Part shown: positions 11,060-64,000 of the stretch, piece after piece
How the letters are laid out: every line of letters begins with the position of its first letter
Numbering within the stretch: position 1 is the first letter of the stretch
IMG/VR virus record: IMGVR_UViG_3300020477_001008
Span: 178,647 to 242,646 of that record
DNA: 64,000 nt
Direction: 5' to 3' (one strand)
Notes under the pieces: generated by a model
Databases searched by the model: none
Seen by the model: the letters and a program-made list of their open reading frames with translations, nothing else
What the model was told of the DNA's origin: nothing
Position numbers and translations under genes: made by a program

Positions 11060-11062
11060 AAA

Positions 11063-11506: not shown

Positions 11507-11521
11507 AGACTTGATTAAGGG

Positions 11522-11541
11522 TAGGGTGTTTAGGCACCCTA
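11522..11541 (+). terminator. GC-rich hairpin between hsp20 and dnaK
   Basis: TAGGGTG-TTTAGG-CACCCTA; no U-tract, so it may be a stabiliser or processing site. Confidence 0.35.
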
Positions 11542-11599
11542 TCTAAAAGGTCGTAAATTAAAAAAACGTGCTTATATATAAAGGCGTAAAGGAGAAAAG

Positions 11600-50651: not shown

Positions 50652-50652
50652 T

Positions 50653-50856: not shown

Positions 50857-50857
50857 A

Positions 50858-51556
50858 ATGAAACTTGCAGAATTTTTTTTAAAAGAAAACTTTGATTTAA
50901 CCGATTTGGTTTATTATGATGAAGTCCAACTTAAAAAGTCAGAGAAAAAAGTAGAAGAATATGAAGCACATCATTTAAAAGATGGTTGGCAAGATATTAA
51001 ATTAGAATCACCACCTGATAATAATAGTGATGAAACTAAAAATGAATTAGTTACTATTACTAACATACAAGAAAAAAGAACTGAAGAAGATGAAAATTCT
51101 ATTCACGTTTCTGATATGATGGACGCATTTCATTTTAGAGAATTTTTAAATGCAAAGAAAATAGATTATAGATCTAGCGAAATATCAGCTATTATTGATG
51201 ATGTATGGAAAGTAGTTAGAACATATAAAAATATGTATAATAGACCTAGGCCATATCAAATTGCTGAAGCATATAATATGGAGTTTGATACAATGTACGG
51301 TCAGAGTAACAAAACACCTGCTTATCCTAGTGGTCACAGTTGTGGTGCTAGAGTAGTTGCTGAATACCTATCAAAAAAATATCCTGAGCATAAAGAAAAA
51401 TTTTTAGAGATAGCTGAAAAAATTGGCATAGGAAGAATACAAGCTGGTTTTCATTATCCATCAGATCACGTAGCAGGAATAGATCTTGCATTAAAAGTTT
51501 TTCCTTATTTAGAAATATCAGAACAACATTTGGACGATTATAAAAATGAAAATTAA
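50858..51556 (+). CDS. PAP2-superfamily acid phosphatase
   Basis: KNMYNRPRP, PAYPSGH, GRIQAGFHYPSD; MKLAEFFLKE leader. Confidence 0.85.
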   Translation: MKLAEFFLKENFDLTDLVYYDEVQLKKSEKKVEEYEAHHLKDGWQDIKLESPPDNNSDETKNELVTITNIQEKRTEEDENSIHVSDMMDAFHFREFLNAKKIDYRSSEISAIIDDVWKVVRTYKNMYNRPRPYQIAEAYNMEFDTMYGQSNKTPAYPSGHSCGARVVAEYLSKKYPEHKEKFLEIAEKIGIGRIQAGFHYPSDHVAGIDLALKVFPYLEISEQHLDDYKNEN

Positions 51557-52016
51557 AGATATTACAAATGAATGGATTCCAATATATAGCACAATGAAAG
51601 CTTATGGTATGAAACGTGCTAAACATCCAGACGGTTCAAGATATTTTAAATTAGCTGAACAAGAAATTACAGATCAAGATTTACAGCAATTAGAAACGTA
51701 TGCTGATAGATTATTTGCATCATTAGGAATTGATGTTGCATTTTCAAAACATTTTAAAGACAGATTAAATGATCCAAGAAATAAAAAACCAATAACAATG
51801 GGAGAACTTACTAGGTTATTTAGACAGGTCTATAAACAACACGGTAAGCCAATTGCACAATTAGGTCCAGACGCAGAAGCAGTAATGAAAGATATGAAAA
51901 CTGATGTAAATGTTCCATTTGCTTTACAATGGGATGGCAACGAATTAGATTTAGTTGCAAAAACAGTTATGCGTAAACAAAACTTTGCAACGCCTAATCC
52001 TGAATTTAGAATTTAA
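51546..52016 (+). CDS. Hypothetical phage protein with capsid-targeting-like leader
   Basis: MKIKDITNE leader; FSKHFKDRLNDPRN...KTVMRK core. Confidence 0.65.
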   Translation: MKIKDITNEWIPIYSTMKAYGMKRAKHPDGSRYFKLAEQEITDQDLQQLETYADRLFASLGIDVAFSKHFKDRLNDPRNKKPITMGELTRLFRQVYKQHGKPIAQLGPDAEAVMKDMKTDVNVPFALQWDGNELDLVAKTVMRKQNFATPNPEFRI

Positions 52017-52026
52017 GAGAGTTTTT

Positions 52027-52230
52027 ATGAAATGGGCGTTGGTGATTTTATATTTTGTAGTGGGACCTGAAGGTGGTTGGTATGAAAGTGAACGTAAATT
52101 TTTTAAAACAGAAACAGAATGTAAAGAGCATATGGAGTTCTTTAATTCTATGCCAAAGCCAGGAACAATGACATCAAGATGTATTACTAGTACAGATGAA
52201 GGTTGGTGGAATAAAAAGGATAGTATATAA
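52027..52230 (+). CDS. Small secreted/membrane protein
   Basis: MKWALVILYFV, F.TETEC...C; start at ATG 52027. Confidence 0.55.
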   Translation: MKWALVILYFVVGPEGGWYESERKFFKTETECKEHMEFFNSMPKPGTMTSRCITSTDEGWWNKKDSI

Positions 52231-52556
52231 TGGAATTATTACTTAAAGCAATTATTGGTGGTATAGTAATTGCAACAGTTAGTACAGTTGGACAACGTTA
52301 TCCCACTATAGGAGCCTTTGTGTTAGGTGTACCATTAGCAACATTTGTGTCATTTATTTTTATGCATTATGCTGGAGTAGATGTACAAACATTTAAAACT
52401 ATTAGTATACAAACTGTATACTTTGTGTTAATTAGTTTATTATTCTTTCCTGTATTTGTTTTTATGTTACCGCAATATGGATTTTTAATGTCAATGCTTT
52501 CTGGAGTTGTAATTTCAGGTTCATTGATGCTATTATTATTAAAGTATGTCAGCTAA
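52230..52556 (+). CDS. Four-TM membrane protein (DUF3147-like)
   Basis: KAIIGGIVIATVS...YPTIGAFVLGVPL. Confidence 0.55.
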   Translation: MELLLKAIIGGIVIATVSTVGQRYPTIGAFVLGVPLATFVSFIFMHYAGVDVQTFKTISIQTVYFVLISLLFFPVFVFMLPQYGFLMSMLSGVVISGSLMLLLLKYVS

Positions 52557-52761
52557 TTTTGATAAAACACATAATCAGTTTTGTAAAGTTTACGTGGCTA
52601 ATGAGAAAAAGACTGATACATTTCATTGGGGATACTTTACTAAACGTATGGTTGATAAAGAGTTTAAAGAATTAGTTAAGTCAGACGAATGGGATGTTAT
52701 AGTAGTTGATGATATTACTAAAGAAGAATTTGATAAAATAATGGAACCATATACAGGATGA
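52546..52761 (+). CDS. Hypothetical protein
   Basis: Coupled ORF. Confidence 0.55.
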   Translation: MSANFDKTHNQFCKVYVANEKKTDTFHWGYFTKRMVDKEFKELVKSDEWDVIVVDDITKEEFDKIMEPYTG

Positions 52762-52988
52762 TTGATTGGGATAGACATAAAAGACCACAGTATGAACCAC
52801 CAAGTTGGATTGAGTGGCAACCAACTAATCCTATGAAATATTTGTTTATGCTTTGTCTTGTTCTTTGGATACTTCCAGTTTTATTTGGATTAATTTTAAC
52901 ACCCTTAGGTGCAATAGTTAATATTTTATTTGTTGATTGGGTTATGTATAAAAGAGATACTTCTTTTTTAAACCGTGATCGTGATTAA
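52758..52988 (+). CDS. Small membrane protein
   Basis: Two hydrophobic segments. Confidence 0.55.
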   Translation: MIDWDRHKRPQYEPPSWIEWQPTNPMKYLFMLCLVLWILPVLFGLILTPLGAIVNILFVDWVMYKRDTSFLNRDRD

Positions 52989-52996
52989 ATATTATT

Positions 52997-53542
52997 ATGC
53001 ACAAAGAATATTTTTTTCATATACCTAAACTAGATTTAAATGATGAACAAAGGTCTATATTACATAAAAAATATCTAGTTTCTAAAATTACACATAAAGG
53101 TTATAATAAAAATACGCATCAATATCTTAAAACATTTCATACTGAAATTGATGTTTTAAAAGACATTTATTCAAGTAAAATAATTAAGCAAATAGAAGAT
53201 TTATGTGAAGGATTACCTATAGATAAATTTAATAGACACACGTCATACGAATTTTTAAAAACAGAAGGTAAAGTTGAAATACATAGAGATCCTGTACGTT
53301 TAGCAGTTTTAGTTATTCCTTTGTTTAGTAAAGAAAACAATAAATTAGAATTTTGGAATGAAGAAGAAACAAAAATTGTTAATGAATTAGATTATGGTAC
53401 TAAAACCTATATAATGAGAACTCGTGTGCCTCATAGTGTATCAACTAGTAAAAAACCAAGGGTTTTTTGGCAGGGAAGTATTTTTACAAGAGATTTTGAT
53501 GAAGTGTTAAAAGATTATCGTCAAGGACGACTTTTTAAATAA
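52997..53542 (+). CDS. Cupin / 2OG-Fe(II) oxygenase-like protein
   Basis: IHRDPVR...PHSV...PRV; TTAAATA-N5-ATG. Confidence 0.5.
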   Translation: MHKEYFFHIPKLDLNDEQRSILHKKYLVSKITHKGYNKNTHQYLKTFHTEIDVLKDIYSSKIIKQIEDLCEGLPIDKFNRHTSYEFLKTEGKVEIHRDPVRLAVLVIPLFSKENNKLEFWNEEETKIVNELDYGTKTYIMRTRVPHSVSTSKKPRVFWQGSIFTRDFDEVLKDYRQGRLFK

Positions 53543-53550
53543 ATATTGTT

Positions 53551-53754
53551 ATGATAGAATGGATAAAAAAATTGTTCGCATCGCAGACTTACGAACTAAT
53601 TATAGAGCATTTAGGAACAGTAAAAAATTATACAGTTACTAAGGTTTATACATTAAATGATCGTACTGCTCATTTTAAAGCAATAGATGGCGAAAAATAT
53701 ACATTAAGAAGTGCTGATAAAATGAGTTGGTCTTTAAGAAAGATTACAAAATGA
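53551..53754 (+). CDS. Hypothetical protein
   Basis: ATAAATA-N5-ATG. Confidence 0.6.
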   Translation: MIEWIKKLFASQTYELIIEHLGTVKNYTVTKVYTLNDRTAHFKAIDGEKYTLRSADKMSWSLRKITK

Positions 53755-53951
53755 GTAAATTTAGAGTAATTGAAAAATCAAATAAAACGTTTATTCTTAA
53801 ACAAGAGAACGTAATTGAAGCTATTGCTAACTTTCTTGCTGATGCTGGTATGCTAGAAGAAGACGAAACTGAAGGTAAAATGACTTATAAAATGAACAAA
53901 GATGCTTCAATAACAGTTGAATTGCACTTTGCAAAAACCACTGTAAACTAA
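53751..53951 (+). CDS. Hypothetical protein
   Basis: ATGA-coupled to upstream ORF. Confidence 0.55.
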   Translation: MSKFRVIEKSNKTFILKQENVIEAIANFLADAGMLEEDETEGKMTYKMNKDASITVELHFAKTTVN

Positions 53952-53974
53952 AATAAACACTAAATACAGCTATT

Positions 53975-54475
53975 ATGCGTTATTCGGAAATAATTAATGA
54001 GTCAATGAGCTTTTCAGCAGGACATTCTGAGAAAAGAGAAGACGGAAACTACTGGATAAGCGACACAGATTCAGGTGATAGATATGCTCCAGAATTTTAT
54101 AAGAATATGGACAAGTATTCTAAAGATCTTGATTTAGAGCCACCTGAAAACCCAGATTATAAAGAAGAATTAGATTTATCATTATCAAACGCAAGTATGC
54201 GTGAAGTATTTCACGAATTAGGATATCCTACAGATTTAGAGGACAGAGCACCTTTTCCAATAGATGAATTTATTGGTAGAACTACACAATGGTTACAAAA
54301 AGCAATTGGCAAGCCATCTCCAGAGCAAAAACCAGAAATAGTTAAACAACCATATGGGGCTACAATGATTAGTGGTGGCAAACCAGAAGGATATTTTAAT
54401 AGAGTTATCAAAAGAATGAATGAGATTGCTAGAGCTGGGAAACAAAATGGTGCAACTCACGTGTGGGCAAGTTAG
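53975..54475 (+). CDS. Hypothetical protein with capsid-targeting-like leader
   Basis: MRYSEIINE; CTAAATA-N8-ATG. Confidence 0.65.
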   Translation: MRYSEIINESMSFSAGHSEKREDGNYWISDTDSGDRYAPEFYKNMDKYSKDLDLEPPENPDYKEELDLSLSNASMREVFHELGYPTDLEDRAPFPIDEFIGRTTQWLQKAIGKPSPEQKPEIVKQPYGATMISGGKPEGYFNRVIKRMNEIARAGKQNGATHVWAS

Positions 54476-54487
54476 GTAAATATTACT

Positions 54488-56500
54488 ATGAGACTTACAA
54501 AACTTTTTGAAGCATTAGATAAACAAGCTAAAAAGCCAAATCCAATGGCTAAAGCATTATCAGATCCTAAATTTAAGCCAAAAACAGAAACAGATAAAAA
54601 GAAAGAAGCTAAAAAAGGTTATCAAAAGCATAAAGGTAAGATAGATGAAGCAGGCTACGAAGGACAAGTAGAGCCAACACACCACGATTTTAAAAATGTA
54701 AATTTAGATTCAATTAAAAAAATTATAGCTGATAGAGATTTATCAGCAGATGCTGAAGAAGTAGATGGTGCTATTAGAGTACACACATATGATACTGATA
54801 GAAAATCAGTAGCAAAATCATTAGGAATCAATGAAGAACTTTATATTAATGGTATGAAAGATGTTGAAGATGTTATTAATATGATTAAAGACACACTTGA
54901 TGATGGTCAAATTGATAGTGCTAAAGATTATTTAGAACAGTTTAAAGAATATCTACACTCAAAAGGAATTACAGATTCAGTTGATCCTATTAGACACGAT
55001 CAAGATGCTAAAGAAGAACTTGCAAAAGAAATTTATGCTAACAATGAATATTACCAAAGTGAGTATGAAGATTGGGAAGCATTTATGAATTCAGATGATT
55101 TTGAAGAAGAAAATATGAGACTATGGAGTAAGTTTGGTGAATCAAAAATTAAACCATATGTGTCTATGTATAATGATAAAGACACAGGTAAGATGACGTA
55201 TGACGTATTAGATAGCGATGGAAAATCAGCATTTAAAACTAAAGACAAGAAAGCGGCTATGGGTTTCTTTAATAAAAACTTTGATGCTTTAAGAAAAGGT
55301 TTTGATTCATTAAAAGATGAAAATGTTTCAGCTATAGCTAAAGCAATAAATTCAGCTTATGATCCAACTTTTGGAGATACTGATAATAGATTTATGAAAA
55401 CTGTAAAAAAATTAAATCCTTTTAAAAGTGATGAATATAAAAAATTGCAAATGGCAAAACAAGCTGAAAGAGATAATCCAAATTGGAAAGGTGAGCCTGG
55501 CGACCAAGCTGGTGAAACTTTACCAAATGGAAGAAGAGCATATTACAGAAATGTAAATGGACAGAAGCAAAGAGTAGATATTTACAAAGACATATATCCA
55601 AGTGAAGCAGTTGCAGAATTTGATGGTCCAGATGAAACTAAAGATAATGCAGACTTTACAGATAAAGAAATTAAAATGGCGTTTGGTGTTTTAAATGATC
55701 CAAGATTTAAAGGTGGTAATTACAGTGGTGCTGTTAATGTTATTAATAAAATTGCACCAGGTTTAGCAGATCACCCATCAGTAGCAAATGCTTTAAAAAG
55801 AACAAATGAAAATTTAACTGAAGATCAAATGACAGATGAAGTTAAAGCAATATTAGACAAACACGGTATTAAAAGTACAGACGATATTGAATATGGTGGA
55901 GAAGCTTTTAGTGATTTATTTGATTATTTCTCAAGTGATCCTGATGAAATGCCATATGGTGTTCAAAAAGCAAGAACAGGAATGCCAGATGAATGGATTG
56001 CAAATAGAATTTTAGATTTAGGTTTACTTAAAGAAGTAGAGCCACAAATGAATCCAGAACCTAATAGACCACAACCTACTACTCCACAAAGAGGACCAGA
56101 TGATACAAGATTAAAAACAAATGTTTCTTTACAACAAATTGCTAACTTATTTCCTGGAATAGAAGATAAGCAAACATTTTTACAATCATTGTTAAGATTA
56201 AAGCAAGGGCAAAAAATTTCAATGCAACACGCATATACTTTAGCTAATGCATTTAAAGAATTAATTTCAAAAGATCCACAAGACACACAAAGAGCAATGA
56301 TACAATTAAAAAAAATCGGAGCTCAAGAGTCAATAAACGAAACTAAAGAAGATGATGCACCTGGTTATCCACACCAATATAAAACTATGAATCAAGGTAA
56401 GACGCCAGAAGAAGCATTACAAGATGAAAGAATTGAAGATAGTAAAGAATTAGAACGAATTCAAATGTTAGCAGGGTTATTTCATAGCGAGAAGGAATAA
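54488..56500 (+). CDS. Large modular putative head-internal polyprotein
   Basis: MRLTKLFE leader; unrelated short modules separated by (I/L/V)xE sites; ends ELERIQMLAGL. Confidence 0.65.
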   Translation: MRLTKLFEALDKQAKKPNPMAKALSDPKFKPKTETDKKKEAKKGYQKHKGKIDEAGYEGQVEPTHHDFKNVNLDSIKKIIADRDLSADAEEVDGAIRVHTYDTDRKSVAKSLGINEELYINGMKDVEDVINMIKDTLDDGQIDSAKDYLEQFKEYLHSKGITDSVDPIRHDQDAKEELAKEIYANNEYYQSEYEDWEAFMNSDDFEEENMRLWSKFGESKIKPYVSMYNDKDTGKMTYDVLDSDGKSAFKTKDKKAAMGFFNKNFDALRKGFDSLKDENVSAIAKAINSAYDPTFGDTDNRFMKTVKKLNPFKSDEYKKLQMAKQAERDNPNWKGEPGDQAGETLPNGRRAYYRNVNGQKQRVDIYKDIYPSEAVAEFDGPDETKDNADFTDKEIKMAFGVLNDPRFKGGNYSGAVNVINKIAPGLADHPSVANALKRTNENLTEDQMTDEVKAILDKHGIKSTDDIEYGGEAFSDLFDYFSSDPDEMPYGVQKARTGMPDEWIANRILDLGLLKEVEPQMNPEPNRPQPTTPQRGPDDTRLKTNVSLQQIANLFPGIEDKQTFLQSLLRLKQGQKISMQHAYTLANAFKELISKDPQDTQRAMIQLKKIGAQESINETKEDDAPGYPHQYKTMNQGKTPEEALQDERIEDSKELERIQMLAGLFHSEKE

Positions 56501-56503
56501 GCT

Positions 56504-57142
56504 ATGGACCTTGAATATCTAAAAAAATTAGCAGGGATAGGTGAGCAGAATCAAATGAAAAGTTTGGCTCAAGAAATGGCCGAACGTAGAAGAGACATTA
56601 TGAAAAATGTAATGAAAGAACAAAAAGAAGAACAATTGGAATTACAAGCACTTCCTTACAAAATTACAGATTTAGCACCAGTACTATCAAAAGAAAATGT
56701 TGATTATCATTATGATATATTAAGTAGAGGATACGTAAACAGATATAATAATAATGAAGGCGATTCAGACTTTAATTATGGTGGTGCAAAACTACACAAT
56801 TTATGGTGGCAACAATTTAAACCAGCAAAAGAAACATCAAATTACAGCGGTCCTATAAAGCAAACTATAGATGCTAATTATGGTGATTTAAAAGGTTTAG
56901 AAGAAAAATTAGTTGAAGCCGCAATGACTATACAAGGATCAGGATGGGTTTATCTAACTAAAACTGGAACAATTAAAACAACACCAAATCAAAGTTACAA
57001 ACCAGATGTGTTTATGCCTATAGATATGTGGGAACACAGCTTCACGGACTATGTACCAGCCAAAGACGCAAAGGTTAAATACATTAAAGCAGTTCTTAAA
57101 TTAATAGATTGGAATGCGATTAATAGAAGGTTAGAAGGATGA
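56504..57142 (+). CDS. sod: Fe/Mn superoxide dismutase with N-terminal extension
   Basis: LPY...YHY, LHNLWW, QGSGW, PNQ, DMWEH: all four metal ligands present; Gly-Gly and NQ suggest Mn-type. Confidence 0.9.
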   Translation: MDLEYLKKLAGIGEQNQMKSLAQEMAERRRDIMKNVMKEQKEEQLELQALPYKITDLAPVLSKENVDYHYDILSRGYVNRYNNNEGDSDFNYGGAKLHNLWWQQFKPAKETSNYSGPIKQTIDANYGDLKGLEEKLVEAAMTIQGSGWVYLTKTGTIKTTPNQSYKPDVFMPIDMWEHSFTDYVPAKDAKVKYIKAVLKLIDWNAINRRLEG

Positions 57143-57957
57143 ATTTAAAAGATTTTACTAAAGAAGATATTACACCTGCAGATTTAAAAAGGCTAGGTGC
57201 TTCTGAGCCTCAAATTTATATGCACAAAGATGGCAAAACAATAATGGTGCCTAAATCTAAAGAACAAGAATATGCAAAACAAGGTTATCAAAAGTCTTCA
57301 TTAAGAGCTGAAACAAAAGTAAATGAAAGAATGCCTGCGTCAGTTATCAAGCATAAAGAAAGATTAGCACATATGACGGATCAAGAACTTGCTGATAGAC
57401 ACGGTGATACTGATGAAGAAAGATTAAGACAAATGGCTTGGAGACACGGCTATGGTAAAATGAGTTCACATTATGTTGACAGAATTCGTAGAGCTAAAGA
57501 AAAAGTTGAAGGCTTACAAGAAGACTATGCAAAAATGACAAAAGATTTAATTATTAAATTAGTTAAAAAAGGTAAAACAGATGATGAAATTCAACAAGCA
57601 ACAGGGGAAACTGGTTTGCGAATTAGACTTATTAGAAAAAGTGTCGACTACGATAAAAAAGAAGAAGCAATTAAAATAGCAGAAGAAAACGCAAGAAGAG
57701 ATTTTATGAAAAAAGCGGCCGCTGGAATGGGTGCAGTAGCATTGGGAACAATGGCACCATCAGTAGCTTGGCCAGATGAACCACCTGAAAATTTTGATTT
57801 TATGGATCAGTTCTTTAGTGATAAAATTTTAAATGATCCAAAATATAAAGAGTTTAAATTAAAAGGAAATGATTTTTTAAATATGATGAAAGATTTAGAA
57901 AAGAAATGGGAAAAAGATAAACAAAAAAATAAAGATGATGGTTCAGTAGAGGTATAA
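57139..57957 (+). CDS. Modular putative head protein with internal twin-arginine signal
   Basis: MNLKDFTKE leader; ARRDFMKKAAAGMGAVALGTMAPSVA at 57691-57768. Confidence 0.65.
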   Translation: MNLKDFTKEDITPADLKRLGASEPQIYMHKDGKTIMVPKSKEQEYAKQGYQKSSLRAETKVNERMPASVIKHKERLAHMTDQELADRHGDTDEERLRQMAWRHGYGKMSSHYVDRIRRAKEKVEGLQEDYAKMTKDLIIKLVKKGKTDDEIQQATGETGLRIRLIRKSVDYDKKEEAIKIAEENARRDFMKKAAAGMGAVALGTMAPSVAWPDEPPENFDFMDQFFSDKILNDPKYKEFKLKGNDFLNMMKDLEKKWEKDKQKNKDDGSVEV

Positions 57958-57958
57958 T

Positions 57959-58210
57959 ATGTTAATATCAGAAATTTGCAATAAAAAATTAAAAGAAGAT
58001 GCCACAGCAGGAGCAACTACTTCAGGTGTAGTAGCTTCAGTTAATATGCCGATGTTTACAGGTAAAAGAGGTGGCGATCATTATGCAACAGCCAGAAAGG
58101 CTATTGATCCAATGGGTAAAATCTTTAAGAAAAAGAATTTAAGAAAAGCACCACACAAATTAAAAGATAGTGTTGACAAATTAGTATATACAAAGGAAAT
58201 CACTAAATAA
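57959..58210 (+). CDS. Small putative head protein
   Basis: MLISEICNKKLKE leader, then DATAGATTSGVVASV. Confidence 0.6.
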   Translation: MLISEICNKKLKEDATAGATTSGVVASVNMPMFTGKRGGDHYATARKAIDPMGKIFKKKNLRKAPHKLKDSVDKLVYTKEITK

Positions 58211-58239
58211 CAAAGCAGAGATAGGTGAGCGGAATTATT

Positions 58240-58725
58240 ATGAAAAACAATATAAGAAAATGGAAACAATTAATTGAAAGCTGTGGTGAAATAAACCACA
58301 CTGATTCTGGCGAACACGACCACGAAGCTTCAATGGCACGTGGACAATTATATCATATAGCCAAAGATGCAATTAACTTAATCAAATTTATTGAAAAAGG
58401 TGAAAACCTAGAAGGTTGGGTTGCATCTAAAATTACTAAAGCAAAAGAAAATATATCAGTAGTTGCAGACTATATTGAGTCAGAAAAAACTGTTAACAAT
58501 AACGATTCACCTGAAGAATATACAAAAGTACCTGAAGAAATGCCTACAGAAGAAGATAGCAAATATACAAGTATGAACAAATACGGTATCTATACTACAA
58601 AAAGTAAAGATGGTGATTTTCAAGTTTGGCAACACGACAAACATTTAGGCTCTTTTAAAACTATTCAAGATGTAGATAAGTTCTTAACTACACATCTAAA
58701 CAAAGAATCCGTTGACAATCAATAA
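58240..58725 (+). CDS. Putative head protein
   Basis: KQLIE leader; DHEASMARGQL...LEGWVASKITKA module; CTAAATA at 58203. Confidence 0.6.
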   Translation: MKNNIRKWKQLIESCGEINHTDSGEHDHEASMARGQLYHIAKDAINLIKFIEKGENLEGWVASKITKAKENISVVADYIESEKTVNNNDSPEEYTKVPEEMPTEEDSKYTSMNKYGIYTTKSKDGDFQVWQHDKHLGSFKTIQDVDKFLTTHLNKESVDNQ

Positions 58726-58740
58726 TTAATATTGTATTCT
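58712..58740 (+). promoter_or_regulatory. Sigma70-type promoter for tRNA-Thr/Asn and fdx
   Basis: TTGACA-N17-TATTCT. Confidence 0.65.
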
Positions 58741-58750
58741 ATTAACTTAT

Positions 58751-58826
58751 GCCGCTTTAGCTCAGTTGGTAGAGCAACTGATTTGTAATCAGTAGGTCCG
58801 CGGTTCGAGTCCGTGAAGCGGCACCA
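58751..58826 (+). tRNA. tRNA-Thr (TGT)
   Basis: GCCGCTT/AAGCGGC, ACTGA TT TGT AA TCAGT, CCA. Confidence 0.97.
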
Positions 58827-58837
58827 GGCTACCACAT

Positions 58838-58913
58838 TCCTCGGTAGCTCAGTTGGTAGAGCAGTTGACTGTTAATCAATTGGTCGCAGGTTCGAGTCCT
58901 GCCCGAGGAGCCA
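58838..58913 (+). tRNA. tRNA-Asn (GTT)
   Basis: TCCTCGG/CCGAGGA, GTTGA CT GTT AA TCAAT, CCA. Confidence 0.97.
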
Positions 58914-58926
58914 AAAAGGATTAACA

Positions 58927-59232
58927 ATGACACTGACTATTAATGTTATAGATAGAGACGGAAATAATCATAAAATTGAAACATTTGAAGGCCAATCTAT
59001 AGCTCAAGCAATTGTTCAACATATAAAACCAAGTGAATTTATGATATGTGGAGGTTGTTGTGCTTGTGGTACGTGTGCTGTTGATATTGATAAAAAAGGC
59101 GAACTACCTGAAATGGATGTTGATGAAGATGCATTATTAGATACAGTAGATGATAGAAATCCTAATAGTAGATTAAGTTGCCAAGTACCAATGACTAAAG
59201 AGCTTGATGGAGTTACAGTAAAGATAATATGA
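58927..59232 (+). CDS. fdx: [2Fe-2S] ferredoxin, adrenodoxin/Fdx type
   Basis: CGGCCACGTC...EDALLD...SRLSCQ. Confidence 0.9.
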   Translation: MTLTINVIDRDGNNHKIETFEGQSIAQAIVQHIKPSEFMICGGCCACGTCAVDIDKKGELPEMDVDEDALLDTVDDRNPNSRLSCQVPMTKELDGVTVKII

Positions 59233-59969
59233 TAAAATCATTTACGGTATTTGCACCACAACGTTCCGGAACCAATTACACAGAACATCTTATAACTCAA
59301 AATTTTAAAAATATACATTGTCATTTACCTATGAATGAGTATGCGTGGAAGCACGAACCTAGTGCAAAAAGAATTTATGGAAATTATAAAGAGCATAGAA
59401 AAGAATTAAGACAACATTTACATTTACTTGTAACAAAATATGTTTATAAATGGATTGAAAGTATACAACGGAATGCAGTTGATATTGTTATAAGAAGACC
59501 TGAACTATTAGATATTTCATATTGTAGTTCACACGAAAAATTAAAAACAGAAAACAATATGCAAGTACCAATATCTTGGGTAGTTGGTGAAATAAATTTA
59601 ATTGAACTTGTAAAATTATGGAATGAATTTTATAATAATTGGTTAGAAATGGGACCAAAGTTTAAGCATTGGGGAATAGTAAAGTATGAAAGTCTATTAG
59701 TAAGAGAGTTAAGGCAAAATTTTTTACAAGCTATGCAAAAAACTTATGGATTAGAAAAAGTTAACTTAACTGGCTGGAATTTACCAGTAGCAGTACCAAT
59801 GTCTCCAAGATGGAATAAATCTTTAGCAATAGTTAAGAGCAGAGATTATTCAGATTTAAGTAGATGTTATAAATTAACACAAAATCAAATAGATATTATA
59901 GATACGTTAGTAGACAAAGATTTGCTAGACAAATTAGGATACCCTACAGAAAAACCTATATCCAATTGA
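59229..59969 (+). CDS. Sulfotransferase-fold protein
   Basis: APQRSGTN (5'-PSB loop), KH, VTKYVYKWIES (3'-PB-like), VKYESL. Confidence 0.6.
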   Translation: MIKSFTVFAPQRSGTNYTEHLITQNFKNIHCHLPMNEYAWKHEPSAKRIYGNYKEHRKELRQHLHLLVTKYVYKWIESIQRNAVDIVIRRPELLDISYCSSHEKLKTENNMQVPISWVVGEINLIELVKLWNEFYNNWLEMGPKFKHWGIVKYESLLVRELRQNFLQAMQKTYGLEKVNLTGWNLPVAVPMSPRWNKSLAIVKSRDYSDLSRCYKLTQNQIDIIDTLVDKDLLDKLGYPTEKPISN

Positions 59970-59994
59970 CACATTATACTTTATAGTATATAAT
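59966..59994 (+). promoter_or_regulatory. Perfect sigma70 promoter, leaderless spacing
   Basis: TTGACA-N17-TATAAT-N6-ATG 60001. Confidence 0.8.
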
Positions 59995-60000
59995 CTTAAT

Positions 60001-60231
60001 ATGACAGAATTTACTAATGGAATATTTAAAGTAGTTGCCGGTACTAGTATAGGCCGTGCGTTAATTTATACACTTGGTCATATTATAATTGCAATGACAG
60101 TTGTAAGTTTAGTTACGGGTGCTAGTTTATGGGAAGCGGGGTTAGTTGCTTTAATAGAGCCTACTATAAATGGTTGTTGGTATTATTGTCTTGATAAATT
60201 ATGTACAAAGTACATAAGACAAAGTACATAA
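60001..60231 (+). CDS. DUF2061-like small membrane protein
   Basis: RALIYTLGHIIIAMTV...ALIEP.ING.WYY.LDK. Confidence 0.6.
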   Translation: MTEFTNGIFKVVAGTSIGRALIYTLGHIIIAMTVVSLVTGASLWEAGLVALIEPTINGCWYYCLDKLCTKYIRQST

Positions 60232-60233
60232 GA
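60206..60233 (+). repeat. Perfect 14-bp tandem duplication
   Basis: CAAAGTACATAAGA x2. Confidence 0.9.
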
Positions 60234-60240
60234 TCTTAAT

Positions 60241-60316
60241 GGGGGATTAGCTCATCTGGGAGAGCGCCTGATTTGCATTCAGGAGGTGGCTGGTTCGAGT
60301 CCAGTATCCTCCACCA
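60241..60316 (+). tRNA. tRNA-Ala (TGC)
   Basis: GGGGGAT/ATCCTCC with G3:U70, CCTGA TT TGC AT TCAGG, CCA. Confidence 0.97.
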
Positions 60317-60409
60317 AATTCATTAATAATTATAATAGCATATTTTAAATCATTAACTCATCATTTAAATACAGTTATACGGTATAGGAATAACTAAAAA
60401 GAGAGAGCG

Positions 60410-61390
60410 ATGAGTTTAAAACAAATTATTGAAACAGTTGGTATAGTTGGAATGGCGGCATTATTTTGCTGGTTCCTATTAATGAGTGCTACAAGTATGA
60501 ATAGAGCATACGCAGATGTAACAAACTCAGGTGCAACTACAAATACGCAAACAAATACTTCAGGTTCAAACACTACTATCTCAGGTGGTTATGCGGCTGA
60601 AACAACAAACACATATCAGGATGGCTCATCAAACAATACTACTACTAATAACGATACTACTAATACAACAAATAACAAATCAACTATTCCAGTACCAAGT
60701 GCAGGTGCTCCAAGTATGAGTGCTTACTCTCAAGATGTTTGTGCTGTTGGTAGATCAGGTGGTTTACAATTACCAGGTGTTGGTTTATCAGGTGGTAGTA
60801 CAGCAAGAGATATGAATTGTGAACGTATGAAGCTTTCTAAATTATTAAATGATTATGGTATGAAGGTTGCCGCGGTGGCAATACTCTGCCAAGACGAAAG
60901 AGTGTTTGAAGCAATGGAACAAGCAGGTACTCCTTGTCCGTTTGAAGGTCGAATTGGTAAAGATGCAAAAGCACAATGGGAAAAATACGATATTGAAAGA
61001 CCAGATTACGACAAGTATGTTGAGAAAATGGATGAACGTTTAGAAATAGATGAACGTATTATGAAAGAAGAAGGTGTACTTGAAGAAAACGAAACTTTAA
61101 AAGTAAACATAAAACAAATTGCAAAAGATAATAAAAAATTACAAAAAGAAATACAAAAGTTACAAAAAATGCAGGCAGAATTACTAGCGGCGGCTGAGGA
61201 AGAAGCATCTAAAACAGAAAAGATGATATTACCAAAGAAAAAGCCAGTAGTAGAAACAGTGAATCCAGAAGTGCATACTGATAATAATGATGAGCAGGCT
61301 TGGAATGAGCTTGATGATGAAGCTGTAGAAGATCCATCTGAAGTAATTGAGCCAGTAGCAGAGACAGAATACAATTCAGCAGGGAAGTAA
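60410..61390 (+). CDS. Secreted/membrane protein with Cys-containing conserved domain
   Basis: N-terminal hydrophobic segment, Thr/Asn-rich repeats, SQDVC...NCERMKLSK...LCQDERVFEAM..AGTPCP, coiled coil. Confidence 0.7.
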   Translation: MSLKQIIETVGIVGMAALFCWFLLMSATSMNRAYADVTNSGATTNTQTNTSGSNTTISGGYAAETTNTYQDGSSNNTTTNNDTTNTTNNKSTIPVPSAGAPSMSAYSQDVCAVGRSGGLQLPGVGLSGGSTARDMNCERMKLSKLLNDYGMKVAAVAILCQDERVFEAMEQAGTPCPFEGRIGKDAKAQWEKYDIERPDYDKYVEKMDERLEIDERIMKEEGVLEENETLKVNIKQIAKDNKKLQKEIQKLQKMQAELLAAAEEEASKTEKMILPKKKPVVETVNPEVHTDNNDEQAWNELDDEAVEDPSEVIEPVAETEYNSAGK

Positions 61391-61393
61391 TAG

Positions 61394-63247
61394 ATGAGAG
61401 TGTTTCTTTCAACACTCGTTATAACACTAGGACTGGTGTTATTTTCTACAAACGTGGGCGGTGAAACAGCAACGTCATCAAACTTGTTACCTCAAGGTTC
61501 AGGTTGTAGTCAAACTTATGATGATAATAGTGTAAGTGTACCAGGAGTAGGTTGTTCGGGTAGTGGAAAAAATTTATCAACAGGGGATACAACTAATCAA
61601 GGTTTTGATGTAAGATCAGGTACAGGATACGAATTTGGTACAAGTGGAACTCAAGATTTAGAATCAAATGGTAACATAACAATAGGCTCATCAGGTTCAC
61701 TAGAAAATCTTAATATCATAACAGAGAACGCCACAAGTCATACAACTACAACAGATAGTTTAGATGGTGGTGTTACACTAAAGTCAACCACAGAAACGCA
61801 GAACTGTGAATGGACAGGATCAAGTTATCAATGTGGACAAGCACGTTCAGGCAGAGACACATTCACAGTCAGAGTACAGATCAAAGATGCTAGTGGTAAC
61901 GTGTTGGCCACAGTAGAACAACAAAGGAACACAGATGCTGGTTATTATGGTAACTCAGCTGTACACGATGATACAGTAACTTATACAGGAGAAGGCTCAA
62001 GAAGCTGGGACTGGCAATGGACAGGTACAGATGGTAACAATCCAAATGCTACCAGCAGTAGGCAAGGACCAAACTTGTTAGGTGCGGCACTATATTTGAC
62101 ACTAGCAGACGTTAACTATACGCCAACGCCACCTATATCAGAAGAAACACAAGAAGAAATTAATGAAGCAAATGAAGCCATAGAAGAAGTAGAGGAAATT
62201 ATTGAAAATATTCCAATAGAAGAAATAGTAGAAGGTGTTGAAGAAGTTGCTATAGAAGAACCAACTGTTGAAGTAGCGGAACCTACAATAGAAGAACCAA
62301 CAGTAGAGATTGAACAACAAGCATTCCAAGAATCATTTGAAGAAAACTTTACAGCAATAATTGAAGAAGAAGGTTTAACAGAAACATTTGAACAAGCATT
62401 AGAAGAAGAAGGTATTACAGAAGAACAATTTTTTGAATCAGTAACAGAAATGGTTACAGAAGAATTTGCAACGCCTACAGAATCAGAACCTACTGTAGAA
62501 GAACCTACTGTAGAAGAAGAACCAGTAGTGGAAGAAAGTCCAGTAGTAGAAGAAACACCTACAGAAGAAGAAACAGTAAATACTAACGAAGAGTCAGTAG
62601 AAACAGAAACTGAGCCAACTACAGAAACAGAAGCGGAAACAACTGAAAGTGAGCCTAGTACTGAAACATCATCAGAACCTGAAACGTCAGAAACTGAAAC
62701 GGAAAGCACAGAGAGTGAGACCGAGTCTACAGAATCAGAAGAAGCTGAGACAACTGAACAAGAAGAGTCCACTGGTAATGAGGAAGAGTCAGTGGAAGAA
62801 GGTAACGAGGAAGCATCCACTGATGAACAAGATGGTGCAGATGGAAGTGTTGATACCGATAGTGTAGAATCAGCAGTTAGTGAAATTCAAGCTAAAGTAG
62901 AAAAAGTACTTAAAAAATTAGAATCAAAATTAAAAACAATTGATCAAAAATTAAAAGTTATATCAATTGTAACTTTACAAGGTATGGTTGAAGATCAACC
63001 TGATATGACAGAATATACTCAAACGCAATTTTATGATACAAGAAAAATGTCTGATAATCCAGATTGGTATGCAGAAGATCAATTATTAAATGCTTACAGT
63101 AGATCAATATATCAAAATATTACGTTAGCAGAGTATCAAACTAGCGATCCTGTGTTCCAACATACAGAATCGGTAAATAGAGTAAACGAAACAATAGGCC
63201 GATTAGAGGCTGAACTAGAGGTATTAAGAAATGAACTTAATGAATAA
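61394..63247 (+). CDS. Secreted protein with long Glu/Thr-rich low-complexity stalk
   Basis: Signal peptide, beta-rich domain, EEPTVEE/ETE repeats, C-terminal coiled coil. Confidence 0.7.
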   Translation: MRVFLSTLVITLGLVLFSTNVGGETATSSNLLPQGSGCSQTYDDNSVSVPGVGCSGSGKNLSTGDTTNQGFDVRSGTGYEFGTSGTQDLESNGNITIGSSGSLENLNIITENATSHTTTTDSLDGGVTLKSTTETQNCEWTGSSYQCGQARSGRDTFTVRVQIKDASGNVLATVEQQRNTDAGYYGNSAVHDDTVTYTGEGSRSWDWQWTGTDGNNPNATSSRQGPNLLGAALYLTLADVNYTPTPPISEETQEEINEANEAIEEVEEIIENIPIEEIVEGVEEVAIEEPTVEVAEPTIEEPTVEIEQQAFQESFEENFTAIIEEEGLTETFEQALEEEGITEEQFFESVTEMVTEEFATPTESEPTVEEPTVEEEPVVEESPVVEETPTEEETVNTNEESVETETEPTTETEAETTESEPSTETSSEPETSETETESTESETESTESEEAETTEQEESTGNEEESVEEGNEEASTDEQDGADGSVDTDSVESAVSEIQAKVEKVLKKLESKLKTIDQKLKVISIVTLQGMVEDQPDMTEYTQTQFYDTRKMSDNPDWYAEDQLLNAYSRSIYQNITLAEYQTSDPVFQHTESVNRVNETIGRLEAELEVLRNELNE

Positions 63248-63584
63248 ATTAACTCAATGGGGATCTTTGATCGGAGTCATTTGTGCTATCGGTGGTGGAT
63301 TTTATGCTTGGGGTGAATTTAATACAAGATTATCATCAATTGAAAATAGCGGTAACGTTAACGAATTAAGAGTAGATATGGTTGACAGAATTACAGCTAT
63401 TGAAGATAAACTTGAAGCACAATCAGAATCAGATTTAGGATCTATCCAATCTGACATTAGTGCTATTAAAGAAGATTTATCTAAAGCATTAAAAGAAATC
63501 GAAATTGGCAAAAAAGTGGACGAACTTCAAGATACTAAAATTGAAGCAGTAAGATTAAAAGCAACAAATCCACTCGCAAACTAA
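63231..63584 (+). CDS. Single-TM coiled-coil protein
   Basis: LIGVICAIGGGFYAWGEF..RL..IE, then heptads. Confidence 0.65.
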   Translation: MNLMNKLTQWGSLIGVICAIGGGFYAWGEFNTRLSSIENSGNVNELRVDMVDRITAIEDKLEAQSESDLGSIQSDISAIKEDLSKALKEIEIGKKVDELQDTKIEAVRLKATNPLAN

Positions 63585-63588
63585 ACTA

Positions 63589-63617
63589 TTGACAAAAACC
63601 AATTTGTACAATAGTAT
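63589..63617 (+). promoter_or_regulatory. Sigma70-type promoter for tRNA-Gly
   Basis: TTGACA-N17-TAGTAT. Confidence 0.65.
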
Positions 63618-63627
63618 AGAAGTATAG

Positions 63628-63702
63628 GCGGGTGTAGCTCAGTGGTAGAGCGTCTCGTTGCCAACGAGAAGGTCAAGGGTTCGAACCCCTTTACCCGCTC
63701 CA
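63628..63702 (+). tRNA. tRNA-Gly (GCC)
   Basis: GCGGGTG/TACCCGC, TCTCG TT GCC AA CGAGA, CCA. Confidence 0.97.
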
Positions 63703-63716
63703 GACAAAGGATTGAA

Positions 63717-64000
63717 ATGCAAGAAGAAAAATTTAAAAAATTCACTGGAATGGTCCAGCAAGAAATATACAGTGAGCCAGACTCAGAATTACATCAAAAA
63801 TTAATTGATGAAATATTTCCTGCTTTAGCACAAAGGCCAGATGGTCCAAAAAAGGATGAAAAAATTCTTGATATTGGTTGTGGACCAGGTTTAGTTATGG
63901 ACAAGTTAGTTGAACTAGGTTATAAAAAAGAAAATTTAGTTGGGCTTACAAAAGGTAAATCAGATATTCAAAGAGTAACAGAAAAAGGTTATCGTGTTGT
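63717..64000 (+). CDS. Class I SAM-dependent methyltransferase, 3'-truncated
   Basis: MQEEKF...KILDIGCGPG; runs off the window end. Confidence 0.75.
   Translation, partial: MQEEKFKKFTGMVQQEIYSEPDSELHQKLIDEIFPALAQRPDGPKKDEKILDIGCGPGLVMDKLVELGYKKENLVGLTKGKSDIQRVTEKGYRV

What the first reader, a model, noticed from the sequence alone, without database searches (positions are those of the whole stretch)
57682..57957. Twin-arginine export signal buried mid-protein just after a Glu site
Seen: IAEE-NARRDFMKKAAAGMGAVALGTMAPSVA-WPDE, a close match to S/T-R-R-x-F-L-K followed by an h-region and a signal-peptidase-like site, at about residue 185 of 272. Known: Tat signals work at the N-terminus. Inference: cleavage in the capsid would unmask the signal, so an injected fragment could be routed to the host periplasm or could jam TatC - a protease-activated export address.
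Basis: partly seen in the sequence, partly recalled or inferred. Interest (0 to 1): 0.72.

Follow-up and report, generated by a model that had tools for sequence, protein, structure and literature searches.

The report
Buried Tat export signal, phage fusion
A marine jumbo phage protein carries a genuine-looking twin-arginine export signal two-thirds of the way along its chain, because a small stand-alone exported-protein gene of related phages was fused behind another gene; how the buried signal is used is still open.

Summary
ORF 57139-57957 (+, 272 aa) has ARRDFMKK at aa 185-192, then 20 uncharged residues and a P-S-V-A|W site. The curated Tat-signal model TIGR01409 scores it 25.9-29.5 bits (cut-off 16.7). 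It is the only hit in six frames of the 242-kb genome.

It is a mobile cassette of signal plus a ~60-aa helical hairpin. In related marine jumbo phages, at the same position after a superoxide dismutase gene, it is a separate 98-99-aa gene with RR at residues 12-13. In this lineage it is fused in frame behind an unannotated modular protein. The fusion recurs in many metagenomes and is under purifying selection (dN/dS 0.17).

The premise that Tat signals work only at the N-terminus is outdated: E. coli FecR uses an internal one (Arg79/80). I rank three routes:
- FecR-like hairpin insertion from the internal position (favoured).
- Internal initiation at a conserved TTG/ATG codon 160 with a strong Shine-Dalgarno-like site.

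No export, cleavage or TatC binding was shown. Verdict: a real new variant of a known kind, of moderate interest.

The parts
57139..57957 (+). Whole ORF, 272 aa. Its ATG overlaps the stop of the upstream superoxide dismutase gene (ATGA).
   Evidence: There are 161 metagenomic homologues. dN/dS is 0.23 against the 73%-identical copy in L013.
57139..57165 (+). N-terminal nine residues MNLKDFTKE. They fit the cluster-wide motif M-[KRN]-[LIYF]-x-[DEQK]-[LIFV], which resembles the T4 capsid targeting sequence shifted by one residue. The processing half is imperfect (T-K-E, not L/I-x-E).
   Evidence: T4 CTS sequence from PMC8442874. Roles of its residues 4, 7, 8 and 10 from PMC9026906.
57175..57312 (+). 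Module A (about aa 13-58), a beta-hairpin plus helix. In other family members it lies after module B instead of before it.
   Evidence: pLDDT 70-81 over aa 20-50. No Pfam match.
57328..57492 (+). Module B (about aa 64-118, RMPASVIKHK...MAWRHGYGKMSSHY), the most widely shared module of the family. It is always preceded by x-x-E-[R/GG], mostly with V/I/L at P3.
57523..57666 (+). Module X (about aa 129-176), a long helix plus two short helices. It looks helix-turn-helix-like by eye only.
   Evidence: pLDDT 74-80. No Pfam hit even at E 10.
57603..57618 (+). Candidate internal translation start: AGGGGA (57603-57608), a 7-nt spacer, then TTG (57616-57618, codon 160). The product would be 113 aa with RR at residues 27-28.
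   Evidence: The duplex with the anti-SD is -6.5 kcal/mol. That is stronger than 98.4% of 2019 internal in-frame start-like codons and 82% of ORF starts in the genome. The codon is TTG or ATG, and the rare GGG is kept, in all 7 homologue DNAs.
57676..57687 (+). I180-A181-E182-E183, an L/I-x-E-type site (T4 gp21 specificity) directly before the signal. It is also the point where DNA homology to the stand-alone genes begins.
   Evidence: Protease specificity from PMC9026906.
57688..57768 (+). Tat-type signal, aa 184-210: n-region N-A-R-R-D-F-M-K-K (RR = 57694-57699), an uncharged Ala/Gly-rich h-region from A193, helix-breaking P207, and S208-V209-A210 before W211.
   Evidence: TIGR01409 at 25.9 to 29.5 bits, cut-off 16.7. 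PF10399 at 20 bits. Invariant columns. Weak hydrophobicity. dN/dS 0.29.
57769..57954 (+). Passenger domain, aa 211-272, a predicted helical hairpin. Its conserved core is NF-x-FMD-x-F-x-SDK-x-LNDPKYK-x-FK.
   Evidence: pLDDT 71; helices at 9-21 and 24-56 of the piece. dN/dS 0.08. No significant solved-structure relative.
56504..57142 (+). Upstream neighbour and synteny anchor: an Fe/Mn superoxide dismutase with an N-terminal extension of about 45 aa.
   Evidence: Pfam Sod_Fe_N and Sod_Fe_C. The same neighbour is present in every related locus.
57959..58210 (+). Downstream neighbour, 83 aa. It follows the cassette directly in this lineage and in the 328-kb relative G001. In the L005 lineage its homologue lies about 5 kb further downstream.

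Best explanation
The segment is a genuine twin-arginine (Tat)-type signal peptide followed by a small helical passenger of about 60 aa. Together they form a gene cassette. In related marine jumbo myoviruses the cassette is a stand-alone 98-99-aa gene with the RR at residues 12-13. In the lineage of this window it has been fused in frame to the 3' end of a modular, soluble, unannotated protein, which buries the signal at residue 186.

Shown: the signal match, the stand-alone relatives, the shared gene order, the position of the fusion joint, and purifying selection on the fused copy.

Inferred: the buried signal is still used during infection. The route I favour is the one known for E. coli FecR (class V Tat substrates). 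The internal signal inserts as a hairpin at the host TatBC receptor. The N-terminal 185 residues stay in the cytoplasm. The C-terminal hairpin is moved to the periplasm, where signal peptidase may release it at S-V-A|W.

The role of the passenger is unknown. A small periplasmic phage factor in the manner of T4 Spackle or RI is a guess.

Confidence that the cassette is a real Tat-type export module is about 0.7. Confidence in the specific FecR-like route is about 0.35-0.4.
For: - Signal match: TIGR01409 is above its curated cut-off in the ORF, is the only six-frame hit in the 242-kb genome (E 3.3e-7), and is the only hit in the complete 328-kb relative G001, where it lies on the stand-alone gene (24.5 bits).
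- Stand-alone copies: P0121 (99 aa, 14 contigs up to 102 kb) and L010:3992-4288.
- Gene order: DUF7230 gene, SOD, one gene, then the cassette in the stand-alone lineage. In the fused lineages the order is DUF7230 gene, SOD, fused gene, then the 83-aa gene.
- Fusion joint: DNA homology between fused and stand-alone copies starts at E183/N184.
- Selection: dN/dS against a 73%-identical fused copy is 0.17 for aa 176-272, 0.29 for the signal and 0.08 for the passenger.
- Signal-like rather than anchor-like: the h-region is too weakly hydrophobic for an ordinary membrane anchor, and P at -4 with S-x-A at -3 to -1 is conserved.
- Precedent: internal Tat signals behind a cytoplasmic domain are an accepted class (PMC13673990; FecR Arg79/80, PMC12036975).
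- Family habit: other members join module B to a different internal hydrophobic segment (P0098, P0100, P0118), so N-in/C-out bitopic layouts recur.
- Protein-language-model neighbours of aa 183-272 are small Tat-signal proteins, at scores near 0.8. This is a lead only.
Against: - No experiment exists. The host is unknown, so its Tat system is assumed. The held 55%-complete genome fragment has no TatC gene.
- FecR is the only characterised class V case, and this protein has no homology to it.
- The conserved S-x-A site suggests a cleaved signal, whereas class V signals are described as uncleaved.
- Variants P0013 and P0015 keep ARRNFM but have lost the hydrophobic stretch. The RR motif can therefore persist for a time without a signal function.
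- AlphaFold2 gives the h-region no structure (pLDDT 36-46) and the whole protein only pLDDT 60.
- The complex prediction with E. coli TatB and TatC gave no answer.
- The evidence for an internal start and for a capsid-targeting-like N-terminus points to other routes.
Confidence: 0.4

Rival explanations
1. Internal initiation. Ribosomes also start at codon 160 (TTG here, ATG in some homologues) and make a 113-aa precursor with RR at residues 27-28. That product would be an ordinary N-terminal Tat signal. The gene would then give two in-frame products.
For: - AGGGGA lies 7 nt before the TTG, with a duplex energy of -6.5 kcal/mol. This is stronger than 98.4% of 2019 internal in-frame start-like codons and 82% of ORF starts in the genome.
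- All 7 homologue DNAs keep a start-capable codon (TTG or ATG) and the GGG codon, although GGG is 3.3% of Gly codons and TTG 9.3% of Leu codons here.
- P0020 keeps an ATG 11 codons before RR, at the position of the stand-alone start.
Against: - About 30 internal sites in the genome score as well by chance.
- The homologues are close relatives (synonymous difference 0.44 at most), so shared codons may simply be inherited.
- The same site is kept in P0013 and P0015, which lack the h-region.
- The ATG in P0020 has no ribosome site (+0.6).
- TTG starts are rare.
Confidence: 0.2
2. The protein is targeted into the prohead by its N-terminus. The gp21-type protease cuts it after E182 or E183. The 89-90-aa fragment, now with an N-terminal Tat signal, is injected with the DNA and engages host Tat in the newly infected cell.
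For: - The genome encodes a Peptidase_S77 prohead protease and a Gp23-type capsid protein.
- The scaffold candidate has 16 L/I-x-E sites, and the capsid protein has Y-L-A-E|AASAG at residue 43.
- gp21 cuts after L/I-x-E (PMC9026906), and I-A-E lies directly before the signal. The stand-alone copies have L-N-E or I-S-E there.
- The N-terminal motif is enriched at ORF starts: 13 against 1.2 expected in this genome, replicated as 13 against 1.6 in the independent genome G001. Seven of the 13 lie in the window at 50187-57139.
- The motif matches the T4 CTS MKTYQEFIAE (PMC8442874) at the four positions mapped for targeting and processing, shifted by one residue.
- In the cultured relative PA5oct (capsid protein 70% identical), the 73-aa mass-spectrometry-detected structural protein between portal and protease starts MKINDIITE.
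- In PA5oct, 5 of 10 motif-bearing annotated starts are MS-detected, against 93 of 445 overall (P 0.04).
- Module joints in the family fall at x-x-E sites.
Against: - There is no virion proteome for this lineage, and no homologue in any cultured phage.
- This protein's own N-terminus has T-K-E, not L/I-x-E.
- The motif pattern was defined after seeing the data, and the PA5oct association is weak.
- A stand-alone copy with a free N-terminal Tat signal would probably be exported in the producing cell rather than packaged.
- P0020 has T-N-E before the RR.
- No benefit is evident from sending a protein to the cytoplasm only to export it again.
- Jamming of TatC has no support (one search gave no answer).
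Confidence: 0.15
3. Not a Tat signal in function. The RR and the Ala/Gly-rich stretch serve as a weak membrane anchor inserted by Sec or YidC, as an oligomerisation helix, or as an interaction helix. The match to the Tat model reflects composition and ancestry only.
For: - Short Tat models are composition-sensitive, and Pfam PF10399 is below threshold.
- PF10518 did not hit.
- P0013 and P0015 keep ARRNFM without an h-region.
- AlphaFold2 extends the preceding helix through the RR, aa 173-195.
Against: - The full three-part layout (RR-x-F-M-K, 14-20 uncharged residues, Pro, S-x-A) is conserved between fused and stand-alone copies at about 60% identity.
- It is the single six-frame hit in each of two genomes.
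- The stretch is too polar for a normal anchor.
Confidence: 0.15
4. The fusion is an accident with no function, either a decaying gene or an assembly error.
For: Some variants look like one-off events on single short contigs: P0020 on 1801 bp and P0012 on 1031 bp.
Against: - The 272- to 311-aa fused form occurs in many independent assemblies from ENA, JGI, NCBI and Logan at 73-93% identity.
- Its gene order is intact and dN/dS is well below 1.
Confidence: 0.05

Closest known systems
FecR of E. coli (class V Tat substrates: an internal Tat signal behind a cytoplasmic domain)
   Same: A soluble N-terminal part, then an internal twin-arginine motif and a hydrophobic stretch, then a C-terminal part meant for the periplasm. 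In FecR the RR is at 79/80 and insertion needs TatABC (PMC13673990; PMC12036975).
   Different: There is no sequence homology. The N-terminal part is twice as long and is a string of small modules. The passenger is only about 60 aa. A conserved S-x-A peptidase-type site is present, whereas class V signals are described as uncleaved. The gene is phage-encoded and arose by fusion of a stand-alone signal-bearing gene.
T4 internal proteins (IPI-III, Alt) with a capsid targeting sequence cut by gp21
   Same: A phage with a gp21-type protease. The N-terminus has hydrophobic residues spaced as in MKTYQEFIAE, and there is an L/I-x-E site before the part that would be released.
   Different: T4 internal proteins are cut once, next to the N-terminal 10 residues. 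Here the relevant cut would be internal, at residue 182/183. No T4 internal protein is known to carry an export signal. Packaging is untested here.
Bipartite transit peptides of thylakoid-lumen proteins such as OE23 and OE17 (my own knowledge of the field)
   Same: A Tat signal lies behind an N-terminal targeting part and becomes N-terminal after a processing protease acts. This is the nearest known case of a protease-exposed Tat address.
   Different: That system is a eukaryotic organelle with a stromal processing peptidase and no virus particle. The resemblance is one of logic only.
Rieske iron-sulfur protein N-terminal Tat signal-anchor (Pfam PF10399)
   Same: This is the best Pfam match, at aa 182-206, with RRDF, an Ala/Gly-rich stretch and A-W-P. 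Rieske chains and the NapA signal peptide are among the weak solved-structure hits (E 0.3-0.9).
   Different: The score is 20 bits, below the gathering score of 24. There is no Rieske domain and no cluster-binding residues.
Small periplasmic T4 proteins with cleavable signals (Spackle; RI antiholin, PMC8385771 listed)
   Same: The stand-alone form is a phage protein of about 100 aa with a signal peptide and a small helical mature part.
   Different: Those proteins use Sec-type signals. There is no sequence similarity. The comparison concerns size and layout only, and no function was tested.

Membership tests
Twin-arginine signal peptide (TIGR01409 / PF10518) | Consensus S/T-R-R-x-F-L-K | tested here: met
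   A-R-R-D-F-M-K at aa 185-191. TIGR01409 scores 25.9 bits (ORF) and 29.5 bits (six-frame), against a cut-off of 16.7. PF10518 gave no hit at E 0.01.
Twin-arginine signal peptide (TIGR01409 / PF10518) | Moderately hydrophobic uncharged h-region of 13 or more residues after the motif | tested here: met
   A193 to P212 are uncharged. Mean Kyte-Doolittle is 1.2 over 19 residues, against 2.2 for a real membrane helix in the window.
Twin-arginine signal peptide (TIGR01409 / PF10518) | c-region with small residues at -3 and -1 (signal peptidase I site) | tested here: met
   P207-S208-V209-A210|W211. It is conserved as P-S-[VTK]-A-W-P in fused and stand-alone copies.
Twin-arginine signal peptide (TIGR01409 / PF10518) | Located at the N-terminus of the translated product | tested here: not met
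   RR is at 186-187 of 272. The feature is met in the stand-alone homologues, where RR is at 12-13. It would be met for a product started at codon 160.
Twin-arginine signal peptide (TIGR01409 / PF10518) | Export depends on TatABC and on the RR pair | not testable with these tools
   The complex prediction with E. coli TatB and TatC returned 'no answer' and is not evidence either way.
Class V Tat substrates (FecR type) | Internal Tat signal preceded by a soluble N-terminal domain on the cytoplasmic side | tested here: met
   There are 185 charged, soluble residues with no other hydrophobic segment before the signal. Class definition from PMC13673990.
Class V Tat substrates (FecR type) | The signal is not cleaved and serves as the membrane anchor | tested here: inconclusive
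   A conserved S-x-A site argues for cleavage, and the weak hydrophobicity argues against a stable anchor. No cleavage data exist.
Class V Tat substrates (FecR type) | Homology to FecR or anti-sigma domains | tested here: not met
   No Pfam or NCBIfam family matches the N- or C-terminal parts.
T4-type packaged internal head proteins | The phage encodes a gp21-type (S77) prohead protease | tested here: met
   PF03420 at 90.9 bits, genome position 113085-113525.
T4-type packaged internal head proteins | N-terminal targeting sequence of about 10 aa ending in L/I-x-E | tested here: inconclusive
   MNLKDFTKE has the two hydrophobic positions (L3, F6) but ends T-K-E. The cluster-wide motif is enriched and is shared with an MS-detected PA5oct head-module protein.
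T4-type packaged internal head proteins | Presence in the virion and cleavage by the prohead protease | not testable with these tools
   There is no cultured relative that carries the gene.
Rieske Fe-S subunit Tat signal (PF10399) | Score over the gathering threshold, followed by a Rieske domain | tested here: not met
   20 bits against 24, and no Rieske domain.

The most novel reading that the evidence does not exclude
The cassette is a phage-injected Tat substrate. Proteins of this gene cluster would be loaded into the prohead through a T4-like N-terminal targeting sequence. The gp21-type protease would cut at the Glu sites that separate their modules. The released 89-90-aa fragment would enter the next host cell with a newly exposed twin-arginine signal, so a virion protein is re-addressed to the host periplasm or occupies TatBC. 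The same logic might apply to the other internal hydrophobic module of the family, which is preceded by L-E-E or I-E-E.
Probability: 0.12. Interest if true: 0.85.

Novelty: new variant of a known kind. Interest (0 to 1): 0.5.

Why it matters
Internal Tat signals behind a soluble domain are known in detail from one protein, FecR. A second, unrelated and naturally evolved case would help Tat researchers. This one comes with its own stand-alone control, the same cassette with an N-terminal signal in sister phages. That pairing gives a clean system for asking how position affects recognition by TatBC.

For phage biology it adds a small Tat-addressed periplasmic factor to the repertoire of uncultured marine jumbo phages. 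It also draws attention to a gene cluster with a shared N-terminal motif that may mark capsid-loaded proteins. If the capsid-protease route were true, it would be the first virion protein re-addressed to a host export pathway after injection.

Tried and rejected
- tblastn of the whole protein, of the stand-alone 99-aa form and of the 83-aa neighbour against 50,697 cultured-phage records found nothing.
- A megablast of window 50000-64000 found only tRNA matches.
- PHROGs gave nothing for the target.
- Pfam gave nothing for the three N-terminal modules, even at E 10. The helix-turn-helix impression for aa 133-172 is therefore unsupported.
- A profile search of 1.84 billion representatives with the cassette found only 7 clusters. 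One of them (P0126) is a chance match to an Ig-like repeat protein.
- The IMG/VR scan found one further locus only.
- Complex prediction with E. coli TatC and TatB(1-60) returned 'no answer' and is not used.
- The full-length AlphaFold2 model has pLDDT 60, too low for a fold search. The 62-aa passenger is a plain helical hairpin, so I did not fold-search it.
- The solved-structure profile search gave only weak hits: glycoside hydrolases at E 0.004, and Rieske and NapA signals at E 0.3-0.9.
- A resemblance I saw by eye between the 83-aa neighbour and the mature N-terminus of the capsid protein is not supported by BLASTP.
M133 is weaker still (-1.6).
- The cytochrome c fusion P0012 shows no G+C jump at the joint, but it rests on one 1031-bp contig, so I could not decide whether it is real or chimeric.
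- I did not try to identify the host.
Full report
**1. What the window is**

- The window is positions 178647-242646 of a 242,646-bp IMG/VR virus record that CheckV estimates to be 55% complete.
- It has about 31% G+C, all long ORFs lie on the + strand, and there are seven tRNA genes.
- The genome encodes a T4 gp21-type prohead protease (Peptidase_S77, 90.9 bits) and a Gp23-type major capsid protein.
- That capsid protein is about 70% identical to the one of Pseudomonas jumbo phage PA5oct (Arenbergviridae) and of other phages of 280-470 kb.
- The window also carries ClpX, a class V aminotransferase, a SufB/D-type protein, an aldehyde dehydrogenase, DnaK and several radical SAM/SPASM genes.
- It is therefore an uncultured marine jumbo myovirus with a T4-like head module.

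**2. The observation**

- ORF 57139..57957 (+) is 272 aa. Its ATG overlaps the stop of an Fe/Mn superoxide dismutase gene.
- Residues 176-215 read EAIKIAEENARRDFMKKAAAGMGAVALGTMAPSVAWPDEP, with R186-R187.
- NCBIfam TIGR01409 matches aa 186-211 at 25.9 bits, against a cut-off of 16.7.
- In a six-frame search of the whole genome this is the only hit (29.5 bits, E 3.3e-7).
- Pfam's Rieske Tat-signal model matches at 20 bits, under its threshold of 24.
- A193 to P212 are uncharged and only weakly hydrophobic, as expected of Tat h-regions and unlike a real membrane helix in the same window (scale values from memory).
- P207 and S208-V209-A210 form a signal-peptidase-type site.

**3. It is a cassette**

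- A profile of aa 176-272 searched against 1.84 billion representatives found very few relatives. One is a 99-aa protein (P0121) whose match starts at its residue 6.
- P0121 starts MKINDILNENDRREFMKK. A hydrophobic stretch follows, then PSKA|WPSE and the same passenger. It is seen on 14 contigs up to 102 kb.
- A second stand-alone copy of 98 aa, starting MRILEIISENDRRDFMKR, lies in a complete 328-kb phage genome with terminal repeats (L010/G001). There it is again the only TIGR01409 hit (24.5 bits).
- Gene order is shared.
  - In the stand-alone lineage the order is DUF7230 gene, SOD, an FMN-reductase-like gene, then the cassette.
  - In the window and its closer relatives it is DUF7230 gene, SOD, the fused gene, then an 83-aa gene.
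- DNA similarity between fused and stand-alone copies begins at about E183/N184.
- The buried signal is thus the result of fusing a small signal-bearing gene behind another gene.

**4. The fusion is real and maintained**

- The fused form (272-311 aa) occurs in many independent assemblies at 73-93% identity.
- Against the 73%-identical copy, dN/dS is 0.23 overall, 0.17 for aa 176-272, 0.29 for the signal and 0.08 for the passenger.
- RR, F, M, K, the Ala/Gly stretch, P-S-x-A-W-P and the core of the passenger are invariant.

**5. The front part**

- Residues 1-182 have no Pfam, PHROG or NCBIfam family.
- AlphaFold2 gives a low-confidence string of small units (pLDDT 60).
- The family is strikingly modular.
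  - Module B (aa 64-118) is shared by proteins of 180-460 aa.
  - Module A lies before or after module B.
  - Other members add a zinc-ribbon, a cytidylyltransferase-like domain, or a second, unrelated internal hydrophobic segment.
- Some variants replace the cassette.
  - P0013 and P0015 keep ARRNFM but have a different tail.
  - P0012 joins a cytochrome c domain directly after IKLAE, but it rests on one 1031-bp contig.

**6. How the buried signal could work**

*(a) FecR-like route.*
- A 2026 review lists five classes of Tat substrates. Class V has an internal, uncleaved signal behind a folded cytoplasmic domain, with FecR as the example (PMC13673990).
- FecR is inserted through Arg79/Arg80 in a TatABC-dependent way (PMC12036975).
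- The layout here fits without any extra step.
- The family repeatedly joins module B to an internal hydrophobic segment.
- I favour this route because it needs the fewest assumptions.

*(b) Internal initiation.*
- Codon 160 is TTG, preceded by AGGGGA at a spacing of 7 nt.
- The pairing energy with the anti-Shine-Dalgarno sequence is -6.5 kcal/mol. That is stronger than 98.4% of 2019 internal start-like codons and 82% of ORF starts in this genome.
- All seven homologue DNAs have TTG or ATG there and keep the rare GGG codon.
- The product would be 113 aa with RR at 27-28.
- The site is also kept in variants without the h-region, and the sequences are close relatives, so this is suggestive only.

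- gp21 cuts after L/I-x-E (PMC9026906), and I180-A181-E182 lies directly before the signal. The stand-alone copies have L-N-E or I-S-E at the matching place.
- The head module shows the expected marks. The scaffold candidate has 16 L/I-x-E sites, and the capsid protein has Y-L-A-E|AASAG at residue 43.
- The gene lies in a run of genes whose products start M-[KR]-[LIY]-x-[DE]-[LIF]-x-x-E, for example MRYSEIINE, MRLYEIVEA and MKLAEFFLKE.
- A pattern of this kind starts 13 of 315 ORFs against 1.2 expected. In the independent complete genome G001 it starts 13 of 439 against 1.6 expected.
- The pattern matches the T4 capsid targeting sequence MKTYQEFIAE (PMC8442874), shifted by one residue. The match holds at the four positions that mutagenesis tied to targeting (4, 7) and processing (8, 10) (PMC9026906).
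- In PA5oct, the 73-aa structural protein detected by mass spectrometry between portal and protease starts MKINDIITE, almost the N-terminus of P0121. Its homologue here starts MRYKELKE.
- In PA5oct, 5 of 10 motif-bearing annotated starts are mass-spectrometry-detected, against 93 of 445 overall (P 0.04).
- These are real leads, but packaging of this protein is not shown.
  - Its own N-terminus ends T-K-E.
  - I defined the pattern after seeing the data.
  - A free N-terminal Tat signal on the stand-alone form would compete with packaging.

**7. Not shown**

- There is no evidence for export, for cleavage at any of the three candidate points, for TatC binding or jamming, or for a function of the passenger.
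- The passenger is predicted to be a helical hairpin (pLDDT 71) and has no significant solved relative.
- The TatBC complex prediction returned no answer.
- The held genome fragment has no tatC, so host Tat is assumed. The host is unknown.

**8. Comparison and verdict**

- The segment meets the sequence-defined features of a Tat signal but not the N-terminal position.
- It fits the layout of class V substrates but has no homology to FecR, and it carries a peptidase-type site.
- It shares some features with T4 internal proteins, but the decisive ones cannot be tested here.
- I file it as a new variant of a known kind: a phage-borne Tat cassette captured by gene fusion.
- My estimates are:
  - about 0.7 that the cassette is a true Tat module;
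  - about 0.35-0.4 for the FecR-like route;
  - 0.2 for internal initiation;
  - 0.15 for capsid-protease unmasking (0.12 for the full injected-substrate model);
  - 0.15 that it does not use Tat.
- Interest is 0.5.

Noticed in passing
window 50187-60410 (ORF starts at 50187, 50653, 50858, 51546, 53975, 54488, 57139, 60410); also genome G000 at 111711, 134132, 162766, 163557; G001 at 315644-322932: A run of neighbouring genes whose products begin M-[KR]-[LIY]-x-[DE]-[LIF]-x-x-E. The pattern starts 13 ORFs against about 1.2 expected in this genome and 13 against 1.6 in an independent 328-kb relative. It resembles the T4 capsid targeting sequence and the N-terminus of an MS-detected PA5oct head-module protein. 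Its meaning (capsid loading, degradation tag, or something else) is open.
   Followed up: partly
window 56504-57142: An Fe/Mn superoxide dismutase (Sod_Fe_N and Sod_Fe_C) with an N-terminal extension of about 45 aa that starts MDLEYLKKLAGIGE. By eye the metal-ligand positions look kept. It is a constant neighbour of the cassette in all related loci.
   Followed up: partly
L012:95-982 (protein P0012): A variant in which the front modules are joined, exactly after IKLAE, to a class I cytochrome c domain that has no signal of its own. There is no G+C jump at the joint, but it rests on a single 1031-bp contig, so an assembly chimera cannot be excluded.
   Followed up: partly
L028:2501-3238 and L030:2501-3274 (P0015, P0013): Variants that keep ARRNFM(K/N)K but have lost the hydrophobic stretch and passenger. 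P0015 still ends in D-D-x-S-x-E-V like the cassette, which suggests recombination inside the cassette.
   Followed up: partly
proteins P0098, P0100, P0118, P0119, P0120: A second, unrelated internal hydrophobic module (LAAAG-IIVG-AVAGAGS) lies behind module B. It has no RR and is preceded by L-E-E or I-E-E. Internal hydrophobic segments therefore recur in this family.
   Followed up: no
window 57959-58210: A conserved 83-aa gene directly after the cassette here and in the 328-kb relative. In the L005 lineage it lies about 5 kb further downstream. There is a weak PHROG hit only, and no match in cultured phages.
   Followed up: partly
window 58225-58725: A 166-aa ORF with weak matches to a PHROG annotated 'virion structural protein' (E 0.006) and to DUF3242. 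Its N-terminal region recurs as a module in P0098 and P0120.
   Followed up: no
window 1615-13492 and 20169-43368: A large set of host-like genes: ClpX, a class V aminotransferase, a SufB/D-type protein, aldehyde dehydrogenase and DnaK. There is also a long array of ORFs, four of which I scanned and found to match radical SAM/SPASM families. A 2Fe-2S ferredoxin lies at 58927-59232. This is an iron-sulfur theme that I did not examine.
   Followed up: no
window 60410-61390: A 326-aa ORF that starts with the cluster motif and runs directly into a strongly hydrophobic N-terminal helix (signal or anchor). It matches phrog_20531 (E 6.5e-15), of unknown function.
   Followed up: no
window 54488-56500; L010:921-3983 and 5086-7560: Very long multi-module proteins (670-1020 aa) that combine DUF7230, cytidylyltransferase-like and NT5C-like domains and module B. 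They recall the 'polyvalent proteins' described for phages and conjugative elements (my recollection, not tested).
   Followed up: no
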